A stretch of 64,000 nucleotides of DNA, from positions 174,437-238,436 of IMG/VR virus record IMGVR_UViG_3300037264_008423, one strand, 5' to 3'. The notes under the pieces were generated by a model. It searched no databases. It saw only the letters and a list, made by a program, of their open reading frames with translations, and was not told the DNA's origin. Below are positions 13,894-35,334 of this stretch, piece after piece; position 1 is the first letter of the stretch, and each line of letters begins with the position of its first letter. The translations under genes were made by a program, and so were the position numbers.

Positions 13894-13970
13894 CGGGCTG
13901 TAGCGTAGCCAAGTAACGCGCTTGCATGGGGTGCAAGAGATCGCCGGTGCGAATCCGGCCAGCCCGACCA
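13894..13970 (+). tRNA. tRNA-Pro(GGG)
   Basis: CTTGC-ATGGGGT-GCAAG arm, ACCA end. Confidence 0.9.
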
Positions 13971-29239: not shown

Positions 29240-29854
29240 ATGAACGTGGCTCTGAACTGTAAACAGTGTGGTGATTCTTTCGAGATCCGAAAGGCCGAGC
29301 ATAACCGGCAGCTTAAAAAAGGCAGGCAGCACTTTTTCTGTAGCCTTTCCTGTTGCGCCGCTTATGGCAACACAGCAAGGATCGCACCAGTCATAAAGAA
29401 AAACTGTAAGCATTGCGGTGGAGAGTTTGAGACAAAACAGGATCGGCATGAAGCTGACTTTTGCGGTAAACGATGCGCTTCGCTGGGAAGCGTAACTGCG
29501 TATCGTCGAGCCAGAGCGAGGCTGTCGGGACAGGCGCATGCCAATAATTTTAGCAACGCTAAGGCGCTGCTTGGTAGAGAAAATAAGAAATATAGGCTGC
29601 TGATTCCTTTGCTGACCGAAAGACAGATTAGGTATGAGTTTGAAAAAAGGATCGATAAGTTTGTATTTGACTTGGCGCTCGAAGACCAGAGGGTTTTGAT
29701 CGAGTTTGACGGTCCAGAGCACCGCACGCCTAAAGGGACCGAGCGAGATGCGGTCAGGGACAGGTCCGCCGAGCTGCTGGGTTGGAAGGTTTTAAGGATA
29801 CCGGTGAAAACCGGTCAGATTATTCCAGCTTCCATGCTGGAAGCTGTTCTTTGA
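29240..29854 (+). CDS. DUF559/Vsr-like endonuclease with N-terminal Zn-binding repeats
   Basis: CKQC..FFCSLSC..CKHC; FVFDLALEDQRVLIEFDGPEH...RD...LGWKVLRI. Confidence 0.85.
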   Translation: MNVALNCKQCGDSFEIRKAEHNRQLKKGRQHFFCSLSCCAAYGNTARIAPVIKKNCKHCGGEFETKQDRHEADFCGKRCASLGSVTAYRRARARLSGQAHANNFSNAKALLGRENKKYRLLIPLLTERQIRYEFEKRIDKFVFDLALEDQRVLIEFDGPEHRTPKGTERDAVRDRSAELLGWKVLRIPVKTGQIIPASMLEAVL

Positions 29855-30106: not shown

Positions 30107-30268
30107 AGCGCGCGAACCGCGCGGGTCGAATGTGATTGGTTACCATCAAACCGTTGGTTATTGGTGCAAATCCAATCCGGTCCGCAAGGGCCGGTAGCTC
30201 AATCAGCAGAGCAGCGGTTCCCGTAAGGGATTTCCGATCCTGAGCCTTACCCGTGCGGTTCGCGCGCT
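30107..30268 (+). ncRNA. yrlA: YrlA-type Y RNA (circularly permuted tRNA-like domain plus Ro60-binding stem)
   Basis: 19-bp terminal stem; GTCGAATG with bulged C opposite TTACC; T arm, GCAA-closed acceptor, D arm; about 0.8 kb from Ro60. Confidence 0.88.
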
Positions 30269-30313
30269 CATTTTGGTTCTACAGTGGAGATTAAAAGTAA
30301 ACAAAGCAAAACT

Positions 30314-30880
30314 ATGCTCGATAAAAATAATATCCTCTCTGTGGTGCAAGCCAACCTGTTTGAACCAGTTAACGACGCTAACCGCGAGGCTACCCGGCAG
30401 CGCATCGCTTCCGGTTTGAATCTCGGCCCGGACAAAGTGCTCCTGGGCCGTGAGGCCATCACGATCATTGATGATCAGGAAGTTCATCAGGTCCAGATCG
30501 GCACGGATGGTCAAGCCGTGCTCCTGGGAAACGCCATCGACCGCGCTCTCGGCTTCCTCAACGATCTGTTCAACTGCGACCCCATCGCGATCTGGCTGGC
30601 TTGCTGCAACCGTATTCCGATCAGTGAGAGGGTGAGCCGGGAAAATGTCATGCAGCCGGTGAGCCACGTCCGCGCCGACGGCACGTCTTACTCCCTCAGC
30701 GGTTTGGACCTGGTGAACGGCGTGCTGGCCGCCATGACGGGCAGATACCTGGAAATTGATTTCGTGAAGCCCGAGGAGGGCCGTCCGCCGACCGCGATGA
30801 AGGGCTTTAAAATTCACAGGGAGGCCCTCCAGTCTTCTGAGCCTGCCGCAAATTTAGGCGGCGAGTCCCATACCGATTAG
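30314..30880 (+). CDS. Hypothetical protein between the Y RNAs
   Basis: ORF of about 190 aa. Confidence 0.7.
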   Translation: MLDKNNILSVVQANLFEPVNDANREATRQRIASGLNLGPDKVLLGREAITIIDDQEVHQVQIGTDGQAVLLGNAIDRALGFLNDLFNCDPIAIWLACCNRIPISERVSRENVMQPVSHVRADGTSYSLSGLDLVNGVLAAMTGRYLEIDFVKPEEGRPPTAMKGFKIHREALQSSEPAANLGGESHTD

Positions 30881-30891
30881 CTGCTTTTGAT

Positions 30892-30985
30892 GCCACGAGC
30901 CGAACAGGACCGCGCCCTTGAGTGAGGGGGCTGTCGATGTTTCATGGCGCGCTTCCCGCGCCGTCCAACTTGCTCGTTGCCGTTA
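30892..30985 (+). ncRNA. Second Y RNA candidate (non-tRNA-like)
   Basis: ACGAGC-C-GA pairs with TT-GCTCGT; followed by terminator and Ro60. Confidence 0.7.
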
Positions 30986-30992
30986 GAAAGTC

Positions 30993-31015
30993 AGGCCGCA
31001 CGCAGCGGCCTTTTT
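30993..31015 (+). terminator. Rho-independent terminator after the Y RNA candidate
   Basis: AGGCCGC-ACGCA-GCGGCCT then TTTT. Confidence 0.6.
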
Positions 31016-31058
31016 GCTGCCACATGGTTGGGGGCAGACTGCGCTGAAAGGAAAAACC

Positions 31059-32708
31059 ATGAGTGTTTACCAGACGGTTAGCCGTAAGGCAACCCCGCAA
31101 AATCAACCCATTCCCGGTTCCAAGCAGGTGAAGAACTCCGCAGGTGGTTACACCTGGCTCCTGGATGACTGGAGCCGCCTGCGCCGATTCCTGGTGCTTG
31201 GCTCCCAGGGTGGAACGTATTACGTCAAGGAACAGGATCTCGTCAAGGCCAACGCGGAAGTGGTTGACCGGTGCTTGGGTCTTGACGCGGCCAGGACGAT
31301 TCAGCAAATCGTGGAAGTTTCGGATAAGGGCCTGGCCTATCGCAACGAGGCGGCGCTCTTCGCGCTGGCCAAGGCCGCCGCCGACCAGAATGAAAAGTCA
31401 CGAGCGTTGGCTCTTGACGCGCTGCCGCAAGTGGCGCGCACCGGCACCCACCTGTTTCACTGGGCAAACTATGTTCAGTCGATGCGGGGCTGGGGCCGCG
31501 CCCTGAGAAAGGCGGTCGGGCACTGGTATAACCAGTGGACGGCGGACGAGCTGGCCTACCAGGTCGTCAAGTATCAGCAGCGCGATGGCTGGTCCCACCG
31601 GGACCTGCTCCGCCTGGCGCACCCGGTCGCCGAGACCGAGGGGCACGACGCGGTATTCCGCTGGGTCCTGGGCGGCCAGGAGGCCCTGGCGGCGCGCACG
31701 GTGAAGCGCCAGCGTCCCGGTCAAGAGGTAAAGCCTGAATACACCTACCCGGATCTGGCTTTCCACCTGCCGCAGTTCATCGAGATCTTTGAAAAGGCCA
31801 AGACGGCGGACGCCAAGACGCTTGTCAAGCTGATCACCGAGCGCAGCCTGCCCCGCGAGGCGATCCCCACGGAGCAGTTGAACTGCCCGGAGGTTTGGGA
31901 GGCGCTCTTAGTCAACATGCCAGCCACGGCCCTGGTCCGCAACCTGGGCAAGATGACCAGCATCGGGCTGGTCAAGACGCTTTCCAAGGCGTCCAAGACC
32001 ATTGTGGACAAGCTGGGTAACGCCGCGTGGCTCAAGAAGTCCCGCGTCCACCCGATGCAGTTTTTGATCGCGGCCAAGGTGTATGCCCAGGGTCACGGGG
32101 AAAAGGGCAAGCTCGCCTGGACGCCGGATCAGTCGGTGGTCTCGGCCCTGGAGCGCGCCTTCTACGCCTCTTTTGGCAACGTCAAGCCCATCGGCAACAA
32201 CGTGCTGATCTCGCTGGATATCTCCAGTTCGATGGGACATACGATGGAAGGCACCTGCTTGTCCTGCTACGAGGCGGAAGCGGCCCTGGCGCTAATCCAT
32301 GTCAGCATTGAGGACACCGTGGGGGTCATGGGTTTCGCCACAAACTACCGGGAAATCAAGATCCGCAAGGGCATGAGCCTGGTGGACGCGATGCAGCACG
32401 TCGCCGGTCAGGGCTTCGGCGGCACGGACTGCTCGCTGCCGTTTCGCTGGGCGGGAACGGAGCGGATGGATGTGAACTCATTTATCACGGTCACGGACAA
32501 TGAATCATGGCACGGCGGTGTTCACCCGTCCCAGGCGCTCAACGCCTATCGCCAGGCTTCCGGCAATCAGGCCCGGTCGGTCGTCATGGGCATGACGAGC
32601 ACGGGCTTTACTATCGCGGACCCCAATGACGCGGGTTCGCTCGACGTGGTGGGCTTTGACGCCTCCGCGCCTGCGCTCATCTCGGATTTCTGCCGGGGTG
32701 ATGTCTAA
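31059..32708 (+). CDS. rsr: Ro60/TROVE ribonucleoprotein (Rsr)
   Basis: NSAGGY..LRRFLVLGSQGGTYY; ARTGTHLF; KYQQRDGWSHRDLLRLAHP; vWA DISSSM, GGTDCSLP, TDNESW, VVGFD. Confidence 0.97.
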   Translation: MSVYQTVSRKATPQNQPIPGSKQVKNSAGGYTWLLDDWSRLRRFLVLGSQGGTYYVKEQDLVKANAEVVDRCLGLDAARTIQQIVEVSDKGLAYRNEAALFALAKAAADQNEKSRALALDALPQVARTGTHLFHWANYVQSMRGWGRALRKAVGHWYNQWTADELAYQVVKYQQRDGWSHRDLLRLAHPVAETEGHDAVFRWVLGGQEALAARTVKRQRPGQEVKPEYTYPDLAFHLPQFIEIFEKAKTADAKTLVKLITERSLPREAIPTEQLNCPEVWEALLVNMPATALVRNLGKMTSIGLVKTLSKASKTIVDKLGNAAWLKKSRVHPMQFLIAAKVYAQGHGEKGKLAWTPDQSVVSALERAFYASFGNVKPIGNNVLISLDISSSMGHTMEGTCLSCYEAEAALALIHVSIEDTVGVMGFATNYREIKIRKGMSLVDAMQHVAGQGFGGTDCSLPFRWAGTERMDVNSFITVTDNESWHGGVHPSQALNAYRQASGNQARSVVMGMTSTGFTIADPNDAGSLDVVGFDASAPALISDFCRGDV

Positions 32709-33285
32709 TTCACGGAACCGCGCCCTGGGTGACCGGGACGCGGTTCTACTCTTTACTATGGGTGCTAATCGTCACTGTGTGATTGACTGTTTCGAGTTTG
32801 AGCCAGATAGCAATATCGTGGAAATTGGAACCGATCAGGGCGGGGGTTCCACTCGATTTTTGGCGGACTACGCGCGAGCGCGCCGTTTGAATTTTTGGAC
32901 CGTGGACATCAATCCCCAGCGCATTGATCAGGCCGCCCGGCTGGGCTGCCACGCGGTTTGCGCCAAGGGGGAGGATTTTCTGATCGACTTTGGCAGGCCG
33001 ATTCACTTTGCCTATCTGGACAATCTGGACTGGATGGGCGGCGGCATGGAGGTCCCCGCCAACGTGGCCAGCGCCCAGGCTCACCTGCTTCAAGCGCGGC
33101 GTTTGCTCCAATGGATGACAGCGGGGGTCATCGTCATTGATGATACCTGGCTTAGCCAGGGATTTGGCAAGGGTTATTACGCCGCTCAATTTCTGGCTGA
33201 TTCCGGTTTTACGGTGGAATCGGGACCCGGCTGGCTGGTCCTGGTTCGGAGCATGGCCGCTGGCCGCCGTCTATCGGAAAAGTAA
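32701..33285 (+). CDS. Class I SAM-dependent methyltransferase
   Basis: IVEIGT..GGGST..WTVDIN..FAYLD..VIVIDD; start overlaps Ro60 stop. Confidence 0.82.
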   Translation: MSNSRNRALGDRDAVLLFTMGANRHCVIDCFEFEPDSNIVEIGTDQGGGSTRFLADYARARRLNFWTVDINPQRIDQAARLGCHAVCAKGEDFLIDFGRPIHFAYLDNLDWMGGGMEVPANVASAQAHLLQARRLLQWMTAGVIVIDDTWLSQGFGKGYYAAQFLADSGFTVESGPGWLVLVRSMAAGRRLSEK

Positions 33286-33543: not shown

Positions 33544-33635
33544 GGCCCCTTGGTGTAACAGTAACACGACCGTCTTATACACGGGAAGTCCTAGATGTGG
33601 GCACGATGCTGGTGCAAATCCGGCAGGGGCTACCA
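33544..33635 (+). tRNA. tRNA-Ile(TAT) with long variable region
   Basis: GGCCCCT/AGGGGCT-ACCA, loop CTTATAC, about 22-nt variable region. Confidence 0.75.
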
Positions 33636-34716: not shown

Positions 34717-35334
34717 ATGATTCGTCAAAGCAGCATCGACGCTTACCGTGAAGCTCAGGAGAGCGGCCTGGTCGCCCAGTGCCAGATCCTTGTGCTGGAA
34801 ACCGTGTTCAACCACCATCCGGTTACGGCCAATGAAGTTTTAGACATCCTCTACCAGCAGAACCAGCGTGTGTCTCAAAACACCATCAACACGCGCTTCA
34901 GCGAGTTGGAGGGCATGGGTTTGATCAAGACGGTGGAGCGCAAGCAGGACAAGGTGACTGGCAAGCTCAATAACGCCTGGGTGCCCTGCCCGGAGTTCAG
35001 TGACGAGCAGATTCAGGCTTACAAGCAGGCGCGCCAGCAGGCCGTCAAAGAGAGGCAATCCAACGTGGCGCGCCTGGAGGCGGAGTGCGCCAACCTGCGC
35101 GCCGAGGTTCAACGTTTAAGCCGCCACGCTACGGTGAGCACCGCTTTCACACCGGTCGCCGCCCCCGCCGCTGGCGCTCAGCGGTATGAGCTTTACGCCA
35201 AAGACAAGCCGGGCATGACCGTCAGCAGCCTGGAGCGCGCCAAATCGGAAAAGATGATGCTTTTCTACTGCGAGGCTTTTCAGGTCCCGATGATCCAGGT
35301 TAAGATCAGAAAATTAGCGGTTATCCCGGAATAA
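34717..35334 (+). CDS. Winged HTH DNA-binding protein
   Basis: TANEV...SQNTINTRFSELEGMGLIK; coiled coil. Confidence 0.75.
   Translation: MIRQSSIDAYREAQESGLVAQCQILVLETVFNHHPVTANEVLDILYQQNQRVSQNTINTRFSELEGMGLIKTVERKQDKVTGKLNNAWVPCPEFSDEQIQAYKQARQQAVKERQSNVARLEAECANLRAEVQRLSRHATVSTAFTPVAAPAAGAQRYELYAKDKPGMTVSSLERAKSEKMMLFYCEAFQVPMIQVKIRKLAVIPE

What the first reader, a model, noticed from the sequence alone, without database searches (positions are those of the whole stretch)
30892..31015. Second, non-tRNA-like Y RNA candidate immediately upstream of Ro60
ACGAGC-[C]-GA pairs with TT-GCTCGT, mirroring the vertebrate GUC-C-GA/UU-GAC helix. The interior is closed by GGAC/GTCC with two hairpins. 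A terminator follows. The arrangement recalls the two-Y-RNA rsr loci (YrlA plus YrlB) of Salmonella.
Basis: partly seen in the sequence, partly recalled or inferred. Interest (0 to 1): 0.7.

Follow-up and report, generated by a model that had tools for sequence, protein, structure and literature searches.

The report
Second Y-like RNA before phage Ro60
A jumbo phage carries, directly in front of its Ro60 gene, a conserved RNA hairpin whose base copies the Ro60-binding helix of the phage's own tRNA-like Y RNA. It is very likely a second, hairpin-type Y RNA of a kind already known from bacteria and one Thermus phage, and it is joined to a previously undescribed pseudoknotted leader of the Ro60 mRNA.

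Summary
ACGAGC (30895-30900), bulged C30901 and GA pair with UU and GCUCGU (30970-30977), 82 nt upstream of a genuine Ro60 gene (31059-32708).

The bare pattern is common by chance, about 0.4 per kb. Comparative data make it real. Twelve related phage contigs (Ro60 61-74% identical) have the same element at the same place. The C bulge is invariant. All seven core pairs are kept in 13 of 13 sequences, and four of them show compensatory changes. The YrlA-like RNA of the same genomes has the same helix.

It matches no Rfam family and has no tRNA-like domain. It is best read as a hairpin-type second Y RNA, like M. smegmatis YrlB or phage phiLo Yrl2.

That hairpin is conserved without a U run in all 13 relatives examined. 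Its loop forms a covariation-supported pseudoknot with bases just upstream of the Ro60 start codon. The element is therefore part of a roughly 165-nt structured intercistronic RNA.

Ro60 binding and a discrete transcript could not be tested. A cis-acting, Ro60-sensing leader remains a live alternative.

The parts
30108..30270 (+). First, tRNA-like Y RNA (YrlA-like). The Ro-type helix is GCGGGU-C-GA (30121-30129) with UU-ACCCGU (ending at 30254), and an extra outer stem lies outside it.
   Evidence: Rfam YrlA partial match at 30152-30216, 33.5 bits, E 1.3e-4, below the gathering score of 69. Homologous YrlA matches sit at the syntenic place in 8 relatives. The helix was read.
30284..30880 (+). 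ORF P0001 (198 aa, no Pfam match) between the two Y-like RNAs. It ends 14 nt before the element.
   Evidence: Relatives have ORFs of about 70-80 aa here in most cases, 164 aa in L096 and 214 aa in L098. An RNA-library contig identical to 30475-30665 exists.
30894..30903 (+). 5' strand of the basal helix: (C)ACGAGC, bulged C30901, G30902 and A30903. It contains GCCGAA, the CGAA motif of Y RNAs.
   Evidence: The bulged C is invariant in 13 of 13 sequences. The pair below the bulge is C-G here and U-A in all 12 relatives.
30908..30935 (+). Upper stem and apical hairpin with the conserved CCUU-GAGU-GAGG apex (30915-30928).
   Evidence: The apex is conserved in 11 of 12 relatives. Upper-stem pairs covary, for example GGGCAGC/GCUGCCC in L098 against AACCACC/GG..GGUU.
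30944..30964 (+). Window-specific inserted GC hairpin (AUGGCGCG-CUUCC-CGCGCCGU).
   Evidence: Absent from all 12 relatives. There is no other close copy in the window.
30965..30977 (+). 3' strand: near-invariant CCAAC, then UU, then GCUCGU.
   Evidence: CCAAC is present in 12 of 13 sequences; L110 has UCAAC.
30993..31015 (+). P1 hairpin (GGCCGC-ACGCA-GCGGCC) plus a U5 run. It is terminator-like in the window only.
   Evidence: One search gives the terminator scan. Searches show the hairpin conserved with compensatory changes and without a U run in all 13 relatives.
31001..31005 (+). 5' strand of the pseudoknot (CGCAG in the P1 loop), pairing with CUGCG at 31039-31043.
   Evidence: In relatives CACAG pairs with CUGUG. 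The helix is 96% paired and 3 of its 5 pairs have changes on both sides. The window adds A-U to G-C.
31017..31037 (+). P3 hairpin (CUGCC / GGCAG) with the conserved GGUUGG loop (31026-31031).
   Evidence: Model R2, built without the window, aligns it. The relatives' stem is CGCGC/GCGYG.
31039..31043 (+). 3' strand of the pseudoknot (CUGCG), 16-20 nt upstream of the start codon.
   Evidence: and the sequence.
31059..32708 (+). Ro60 (TROVE plus vWA), 549 aa. An AAGGA ribosome-binding site lies at 31048-31052.
   Evidence: Pfam. PDB matches: Ro60 chain 9nen at 1.9e-113, Ro60 1yvp at 1.8e-112, Rsr 2nvo at 1.2e-104.

Best explanation
The stretch 30894-30977 is a second, hairpin-type Y RNA module of this jumbo phage. 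Its ends form a 6-8 bp helix with an invariant bulged C and a G-R/U-U step above it. This is the same design as the Ro60-binding helix of the phage's own YrlA-like RNA, and I infer that the phage Ro60 encoded next door binds it.

The interior (upper stem, GAGUG apex, and in this phage an extra hairpin) is the variable effector or spacer part, as in other Y RNAs.

The element has no room for its own promoter. It starts 14 nt after the stop codon of the upstream ORF. It must therefore be made from a polycistronic transcript (tmRNA, YrlA, ORF, element, Ro60).

In this phage the following P1 hairpin has acquired a U5 run. I infer that many transcripts end there, giving an RNA of about 120 nt, while read-through yields Ro60 mRNA. 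In read-through RNA the P1 loop pairs with CUGCG just upstream of the ribosome-binding site to form a pseudoknot.

Shown here: conservation, covariation, synteny, shared helix design, absence of coding potential, and absence of any Rfam match. Inferred: Ro60 binding, termination or processing, and any regulatory effect of the pseudoknot.
For: - Ro60 is genuine.
- The element is present at the same place in 12 relatives with 61-74% identical Ro60.
- The structure model on 10 relatives gives 94% of cells paired, against 39-55% for slid controls. Eight pairs have changes on both sides, and 0 of 500 shuffles reach the observed value.
- With the window, L101 and L110 added, the five core pairs and the two pairs above the bulge are kept in 13 of 13 sequences. 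Four core pairs each carry one compensatory change. The bulged C is invariant.
- A covariance model built without the window finds 30892-30984 as its best hit in 64 kb and in the whole 238-kb genome.
- The YrlA-like RNAs of the same genomes carry GCGGGU-C-GA / UU-ACCCGC, including the same U-A to C-G swap below the bulge in L083.
- The GNCGAA/CGAA motif of bacterial and phage Y RNAs (PMC4201824, PMC12135203) is present as GCCGAA.
- No reading frame is consistently open across the relatives.
- The interior is replaceable while the helix is kept, as in L101 and the window insert.
- Precedents exist for a second, non-tRNA-like Y RNA between YrlA and rsr, processed from one precursor (M. smegmatis, PMC4201824), and for two Ro60-binding Yrl RNAs upstream of a phage Ro60 (PMC12135203).
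Against: - No binding or expression data exist. The one RNA library holding this phage has contigs only inside the flanking ORFs, and no RNA run was listed for the element alone.
- The C-bulge plus GA/UU register is not the minimum-energy fold. An alternative GRAC/GUUY pairing is favoured by 3.1 kcal/mol in the window, and covariation cannot separate the two.
- The strict motif GNCGAAN0-1G is not met, because the spacing to the final G is 2 nt. Seven relatives have CGGA or CAGA instead of CGAA.
- In all 13 relatives the hairpin has no U run. The conserved structure continues to the start codon, which fits a leader element at least as well as a free sRNA.
- The apex loop is purine-rich. It is not the small pyrimidine-rich loop noted for YrlB and Yrn2.
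Confidence: 0.6

Rival explanations
1. Cis-acting operator. The Y-like helix is not released. It is a Y RNA mimic inside the Ro60 mRNA leader. Free Ro60 binds it and, through the attached pseudoknotted leader (P1 loop with the bases before the AUG, and possibly CCAACU with the GGUUGG loop of P3), changes translation initiation or termination. Ro60 synthesis would then be tied to the amount of unoccupied Ro60.
For: - The element abuts the upstream stop codon and the structure runs without a break to the start codon.
- The P1 hairpin lacks a U run in all 13 relatives.
- The pseudoknot's 3' strand sits at -11 to -20 from the start codon, inside the 30S footprint, and relatives show no Shine-Dalgarno sequence after it.
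- NCAACY of the Y-like module and RGUUGR of the P3 loop can form 6 contiguous pairs in 12 of 14 sequences, with one double change in L110.
- The leader alone persists in L109 (Ro60 55% identical), where the Y-like part has diverged.
Against: - No case of Ro60 autoregulation through a leader is known to me.
- The CCAAC/GUUGG pairing rests on one compensatory event.
- An alternative helix that would make a switch (ACGCGC with GUGCGU) is not supported by covariation: on the alignment L099, L102 and L103 keep the P3 pair but not the alternative.
- In the window the U5 run and a normal AAGGA site suggest a free RNA plus a conventional ribosome-binding site.
- This reading and the best explanation are not mutually exclusive.
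Confidence: 0.25
2. A structured intercistronic RNA unrelated to Ro60 binding. It could be a processing or stability element for the polycistronic tmRNA-YrlA-Ro60 transcript, or an unknown riboswitch or ribozyme. Its basal helix would resemble the Y RNA helix only by convergence or chance.
For: - Many invariant unpaired nucleotides (GUCGRAC, CCAACUU, AACAGG, GGUGAAAAUCC, GGUUGG, CUGUGCGUA) and one or two pseudoknots are typical of riboswitch-like RNAs.
- The bare helix pattern is frequent by chance.
Against: - The same helix design, with the same covariation below the bulge, occurs in the YrlA-like RNA of each genome.
- The element is found only next to Ro60. It is the single best hit in the 238-kb genome.
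- No Rfam riboswitch or ribozyme family matches it.
Confidence: 0.1
3. Nothing specific: an ordinary 5' UTR with a terminator of the upstream gene, or a small ORF (30922-31047 or 30944-31081).
For: Terminator-like site at 30993-31015. Two short ORFs are listed mechanically.
Against: - Conservation with compensatory changes across 12-13 contigs.
- Stop codons are present in nearly every + strand frame of the relatives; L098 has one open frame.
- The short ORFs depend on the window-specific insert.
Confidence: 0.03

Closest known systems
Mycobacterium smegmatis YrlB (Chen et al. 2014, PMC4201824)
   Same: It is a second Ro60-bound RNA lying between YrlA and rsr on the same strand and made from the same precursor. 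It is shorter than YrlA and is a hairpin-type RNA.
   Different: There is no detectable sequence similarity. M. smegmatis YrlB was reported to have a possible T-arm, which the window element lacks. Binding is shown there and only inferred here.
Thermus phage phiLo Yrl1/Yrl2 (PMC12135203)
   Same: This is a phage Ro60 with two Y RNA-like sequences upstream, recognised by a CGAA motif in a stem-bulge-stem. Yrl2 is a single hairpin.
   Different: phiLo Ro60 is only distantly related (E 1.8e-11 to 9kop). EMSA and cryo-EM evidence exists for phiLo and none exists here. No pseudoknotted leader was described there.
Salmonella Typhimurium YrlB and D. radiodurans Yrn2
   Same: These are second, non-tRNA-like Y RNAs forming a long hairpin. 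Salmonella YrlB shares the GNCGAA-type motif.
   Different: In Salmonella the Y RNAs lie downstream of rsr in the rsr-yrlBA-rtcBA operon. Their apical loops are small and pyrimidine-rich, whereas this apex is GAGUG.
YrlA (Rfam RF02553) of the same phage, 30108-30270
   Same: It has the same basal helix design (stem, U-A or C-G pair, bulged C, G-A over U-U), the same strand and the same locus.
   Different: YrlA encloses a T-arm/D-arm tRNA-like domain. The candidate encloses a simple interrupted hairpin.
Vertebrate Y RNAs (GGUC-C-GA / UU-GACC helix; Stein et al. 2005, as cited in PMC4201824)
   Same: They have the bulged-C helix formed by the 5' and 3' ends, an internal loop above it and a variable upper part. 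Their size is 80-130 nt.
   Different: They are separate Pol III genes, with a La-binding U tail and no linkage to the Ro60 gene.
Autoregulatory mRNA leaders that mimic the protein's RNA ligand (E. coli thrS operator, ribosomal protein S15 pseudoknot; from my own knowledge)
   Same: This is a functional analogy only: a ligand-like helix plus a pseudoknot at the ribosome-binding site.
   Different: No such mechanism is known for Ro60, and nothing was tested here.

Membership tests
Y RNA (Ro60-associated ncRNA, bacterial/phage Yrl type) | Encoded close to a Ro60 ortholog and on the same strand | tested here: met
   The element ends 82 nt upstream of the Ro60 start codon on the + strand. The position is the same in 12 relatives.
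Y RNA (Ro60-associated ncRNA, bacterial/phage Yrl type) | The 5' and 3' ends form a long stem that carries the Ro60 site (a bulged helix) | tested here: met
   The basal helix is 97% paired in 10 relatives, and 5 of its 10 pairs have changes on both sides. Core pairs are kept in 13 of 13 sequences and the bulged C is invariant. The helix design matches that of the co-resident YrlA.
Y RNA (Ro60-associated ncRNA, bacterial/phage Yrl type) | 5' motif GNCGAAN0-1G (Chen 2014) or CGAA (phiLo study) | tested here: inconclusive
   The window has GCCGAA followed by CAG, so the spacing to the G is 2 nt rather than 0-1. Five relatives have GUCGAA, six have GUCGGA and one has GUCAGA.
Y RNA (Ro60-associated ncRNA, bacterial/phage Yrl type) | Size of about 80-130 nt with an internal loop above the stem | tested here: met
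   It is 84 nt from stem to stem (30894-30977) and 122 nt to the end of the U run. There is an internal loop or junction above the helix.
Y RNA (Ro60-associated ncRNA, bacterial/phage Yrl type) | Physically bound by Ro60 | not testable with these tools
   Complex prediction did not fold the protein-RNA job. EMSA or RIP is needed.
Y RNA (Ro60-associated ncRNA, bacterial/phage Yrl type) | Accumulates as a discrete stable RNA | tested here: inconclusive
   One metatranscriptome holds contigs of the flanking ORFs only. No RNA run was listed for the element. Contigs show presence, not absence.
YrlA (Rfam RF02553) | tRNA-like T-arm and D-arm domain enclosed by the stem | tested here: not met
   There is no YrlA or tRNA match to 30880-31060 at E<=10. 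The homologous stretch of L100 also has none. The fold is a simple interrupted hairpin.
Intrinsic terminator (for 30993-31015) | GC-rich hairpin directly followed by a U run, conserved as such | tested here: inconclusive
   Met in the window: 7 pairs, 6 of them GC, then T5. None of the 13 relatives has the U run, and the loop is engaged in a conserved pseudoknot.
Any described RNA family (Rfam 15) | Covariance-model match | tested here: not met
   No match to the element or the leader in the window or in 10 relatives at E<=1 to 10.

The most novel reading that the evidence does not exclude
The Y-like helix and the pseudoknotted leader are one roughly 165-nt cis-acting sensor. Ro60 binds a mimic of its own Y RNA in the leader of its own mRNA. 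Through the CCAACU to GGUUGG contact and the pseudoknot over the ribosome landing site, binding sets Ro60 translation, or in this phage termination at P1. This would be the first autoregulatory circuit described for a Ro60 protein. It would also be a new structured RNA class of jumbo phages.
Probability: 0.2. Interest if true: 0.7.

Novelty: new member of a known kind. Interest (0 to 1): 0.45.

Why it matters
Second Y RNAs were said to elude bioinformatic discovery (PMC4201824), having been found only by immunoprecipitation. This work provides a covariation-supported family of such RNAs from uncultured jumbo phages. The family shows which part is constant (the bulged-C helix plus CCAAC) and which part is free to vary.

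The family gives a defined, small RNA to test against a phage Ro60 that is very close to the structurally solved Ro60 proteins.

The attached conserved pseudoknot over the Ro60 translation start is not in Rfam. It raises a testable question about how Ro60 dosage relative to its Y RNAs is controlled. The arrangement itself (YrlA plus a short Y RNA next to Ro60) is already known, so the result extends current understanding rather than overturning it.

Tried and rejected
- A megablast of the locus against GenBank phages gave no match. The closest phage Ro60 there is 47% identical.
- Single-protein scans of IMG/VR with Ro60 and with P0001 found nothing.
- Models R1 (element) and R2 (leader) found nothing credible in 91 more distant phage or metagenome Ro60 loci. 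The R2 hits there lie inside Ro60 ORFs at E 0.05-0.85 and are chance.
- The second R1 hit in the window, 35065-35109, lies inside a coiled-coil ORF and is rejected as chance.
- The Rfam scans gave only noise on the element and leader. In L100 the only hits were mir-650, a frameshift element and a snoRNA, all on the minus strand.
- RNA evidence: one metatranscriptome (X2) has contigs at 30475-30665 and 32809-33004 but none on the element. No RNA run was listed for the element alone.
- Complex prediction with Ro60 plus the RNA was not folded, so it gives no evidence either way.
- A switch helix (ACGCGC with GUGCGU) competing with P3 was considered and rejected, because L099, L102 and L103 keep P3 but break the alternative.
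- A tRNA-like reading of the leader (P2 as T-arm, P3 as D-arm) rests only on a 13-nt resemblance and has no covariance-model support.
- The window-specific hairpin is not a repeated element in the window.
- One contig (P0005) could not be fetched.

Full report
**Context.** The window is the last 64 kb of a 238-kb IMG/VR virus record estimated 96% complete, so it comes from a jumbo phage. It carries 23 tRNA genes and a tmRNA. The ORF at 31059-32708 is a genuine Ro60. It has TROVE (2e-47) and Ro60-vWA (2e-53) domains. Its PDB matches are Ro60 chains 9nen at 1.9e-113 and 1yvp at 1.8e-112, and Rsr 2nvo at 1.2e-104. About 0.9 kb upstream, at 30108-30270, lies a YrlA-like tRNA-mimicking Y RNA. Rfam gives only a partial hit there (33.5 bits, below gathering), but the same RNA is found at the syntenic place in relatives. 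ORF P0001 (30284-30880, no Pfam match) separates it from the candidate.

**The observation.** The pairing is there as described: ACGAGC 30895-30900, bulged C30901 and GA 30902-3 against UU 30970-1 and GCUCGU 30972-7. The 124-nt stretch folds better than shuffles, with z = -2.9 and 2 of 200 shuffles as good. The minimum-energy fold keeps the basal stem but pairs GAACA with UGUUU instead of GA with UU. Enforcing the Ro-like register costs 3.1 kcal/mol. The bare pattern is not rare, with 51 instances on both strands of the window and 5 if CGAA is required. The single sequence therefore proves nothing.

**Relatives.** GenBank phages hold no close relative. The 5.8-billion-protein search returned a clade of 22 Ro60 proteins 61-74% identical, many on contigs of 130-250 kb. 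I fetched 12 of their loci. All show the same order: tRNA, tmRNA, YrlA-like RNA, small ORF(s), the element, Ro60. All carry the element immediately upstream of Ro60.

**Covariation in the element.**
- On 10 relatives, a model of basal helix, bulged C, two pairs above it and an interrupted upper hairpin gives 94% paired cells. Controls slid by 1-3 columns give 39-55%.
- Eight pairs have changes on both sides, and no shuffle of 500 reaches the observed values.
- With the window, L101 and L110 added, the five core pairs and the two pairs above the bulge are standard pairs in 13 of 13 sequences.
- Four core pairs each carry a compensatory change in one lineage: C-G to U-A in L103, A-U to G-C in L104, G-C to A-U in L083, and U-A to C-G in the window. 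The bulged C never varies.
- A covariance model built without the window (R1) picks 30892-30984 as its best hit in the window and in the whole genome.
- No + strand reading frame is open across the relatives as a set.
- The interior is replaceable. L101 has two unrelated hairpins there, and the window has an extra GC hairpin (30944-30964). The helix and the 3' CCAAC are kept.

**Link to Ro60.** The YrlA-like RNAs of these genomes close with GCGGGU-C-GA / UU-ACCCGC. One of them (L083) shows the same U-A to C-G swap directly below the bulge that distinguishes the window's candidate from its relatives. Two RNAs in one locus thus share one helix design, next to the gene of the protein known to recognise that design. 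The 5' strand contains GCCGAA. The published motif is GNCGAAN0-1G (PMC4201824), or simply CGAA (PMC12135203). The strict spacing to the last G is not met, and seven relatives have CGGA or CAGA.

**Precedents.** In M. smegmatis a second Rsr-bound RNA, YrlB, lies between YrlA and rsr and is cut from the same precursor. In all three bacteria studied one Y RNA is tRNA-like and another is a long hairpin (PMC4201824). Thermus phage phiLo has two Ro60-binding Yrl RNAs upstream of its Ro60 (PMC12135203). A crude scan of more distant IMG/VR Ro60 loci also finds two or three tandem bulged-C helices upstream of Ro60 in 10 of 57 loci.

**The 'terminator'.** The hairpin at 30993-31011 with T5 is the best terminator-like site of the region. 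In all 13 relatives the same hairpin (P1) is conserved with compensatory changes, but without a U run.
- P1 is followed by a small hairpin P2 (YGG-UGAAAAU-CCR), which is absent from the window.
- P2 is followed by P3, a hairpin with a GGUUGG loop.
- The P1 loop (CACAG) is complementary to CUGUG 11-17 nt before the start codon. This pseudoknot is 96% paired, and three of its five pairs have changes on both sides. The whole leader model reaches 97%, against 27-43% for slid controls.
- The window keeps the pseudoknot as CGCAG 31001-5 with CUGCG 31039-43, a further A-U to G-C change. It keeps P3 with a rewritten stem.
- The leader is unique in the genome. It is absent from 91 more distant Ro60 loci. 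It is present in L109, whose Ro60 is only 55% identical and whose Y-like part has diverged.
- No Rfam family matches it.
- The 3' CCAACU of the Y-like module can pair with the RGUUGG loop of P3 in 12 of 14 sequences over six pairs. L110 has one double change, UCAAC with GUUGA. This is suggestive but thin.

**Mechanism.** I take the element to be a Ro60-binding, hairpin-type Y RNA module made from a polycistronic transcript. In this phage P1 has gained a U run and the leader has gained an AAGGA ribosome-binding site and lost P2. A free RNA of about 120 nt plus read-through Ro60 mRNA is therefore the simplest reading (confidence 0.6). In the relatives, and possibly here, the same helix may work in cis as a Ro60-sensing operator coupled to the pseudoknot over the ribosome landing site (0.25). 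The two readings are compatible. A Ro60-independent structured RNA (0.1) is disfavoured by the shared helix design and the exclusive linkage to Ro60.

**What could not be tested.** One metatranscriptome holds contigs of the two flanking ORFs but none on the element. No RNA run was listed for the element alone. The complex predictor does not handle protein-RNA pairs.

**Novelty.** This is a new sequence family of a known kind, a second non-tRNA-like Y RNA next to a phage Ro60. The pseudoknotted leader attached to it is, as far as Rfam and the papers I could read show, undescribed.

Noticed in passing
window 30985-31058; L082-L110 about 2420-2503: The leader of Ro60 is a conserved pseudoknotted RNA: P1, P2, P3 and the P1 loop pairing with bases just before the AUG. 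It is not in Rfam. It is also present in L109, whose Ro60 is only 55% identical.
   Followed up: yes
window 30965-30970 with 31026-31031: CCAACU of the Y-like module is complementary to the GGUUGG loop of P3. Six contiguous pairs form in 12 of 14 sequences, with one compensatory change in L110. This may be a long-range contact joining the two modules.
   Followed up: partly
relatives, e.g. L100 2450-2462; window 13945-13957: Leader hairpin P2 (CGGUGAAAAUCCG) resembles a tRNA T-arm; model R2 weakly hits the T-arm of tRNA-Pro. P2 is deleted in the window and replaced there by the U5 run.
   Followed up: partly
window 30108-30270: This YrlA-like tRNA-mimic Y RNA scores far below the Rfam gathering threshold (33.5 against 69 bits) but is conserved in the clade. 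The window copy has an extra outer GC stem (GCGCGCGAACCGC / GCGGUUCGCGCGC).
   Followed up: partly
window 29240-29854: A DUF559/endonuclease-like ORF sits between the tmRNA and YrlA. These two RNAs lie 20 to about 450 nt apart in the relatives, too close for an ORF of this size, so this looks like an inserted homing-endonuclease-type gene.
   Followed up: no
window 33544-33635: An 89-92 nt tRNA-like gene (called Ile-UAU) with a 19-nt insertion after the anticodon arm lies downstream of Ro60. Similarly long tRNA hits lie downstream of Ro60 in L104 and L099.
   Followed up: no
L101 124-194: A further short bulged-C stem (GGCGGGUCGAAUGG ... AACUUAUCCGCC) lies upstream of the tmRNA in a relative that has no Rfam YrlA hit. 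It may be a third type of short Y-like RNA.
   Followed up: no
L037 2704-2859 and 2876-2943; L018 2654-2957; L044, L066, L038: Distant IMG/VR phage Ro60 loci often carry two or three tandem bulged-C helices just upstream of Ro60, typically one long and one of about 60-70 nt. The rate is 1.07 per kb against a background of 0.38 per kb.
   Followed up: partly
L109 780-886 and 1308-1374: This contig has two YrlA-type hits, a tRNA and a tmRNA upstream of the leader and Ro60. That would make three candidate Y-type RNAs in one locus.
   Followed up: no
window 30475-30665 and 32809-33004: A sediment metatranscriptome library holds contigs identical or nearly identical to parts of the two ORFs flanking the Ro60 region. 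This hints that the phage is active in that sample, although DNA carry-over is not excluded.
   Followed up: partly
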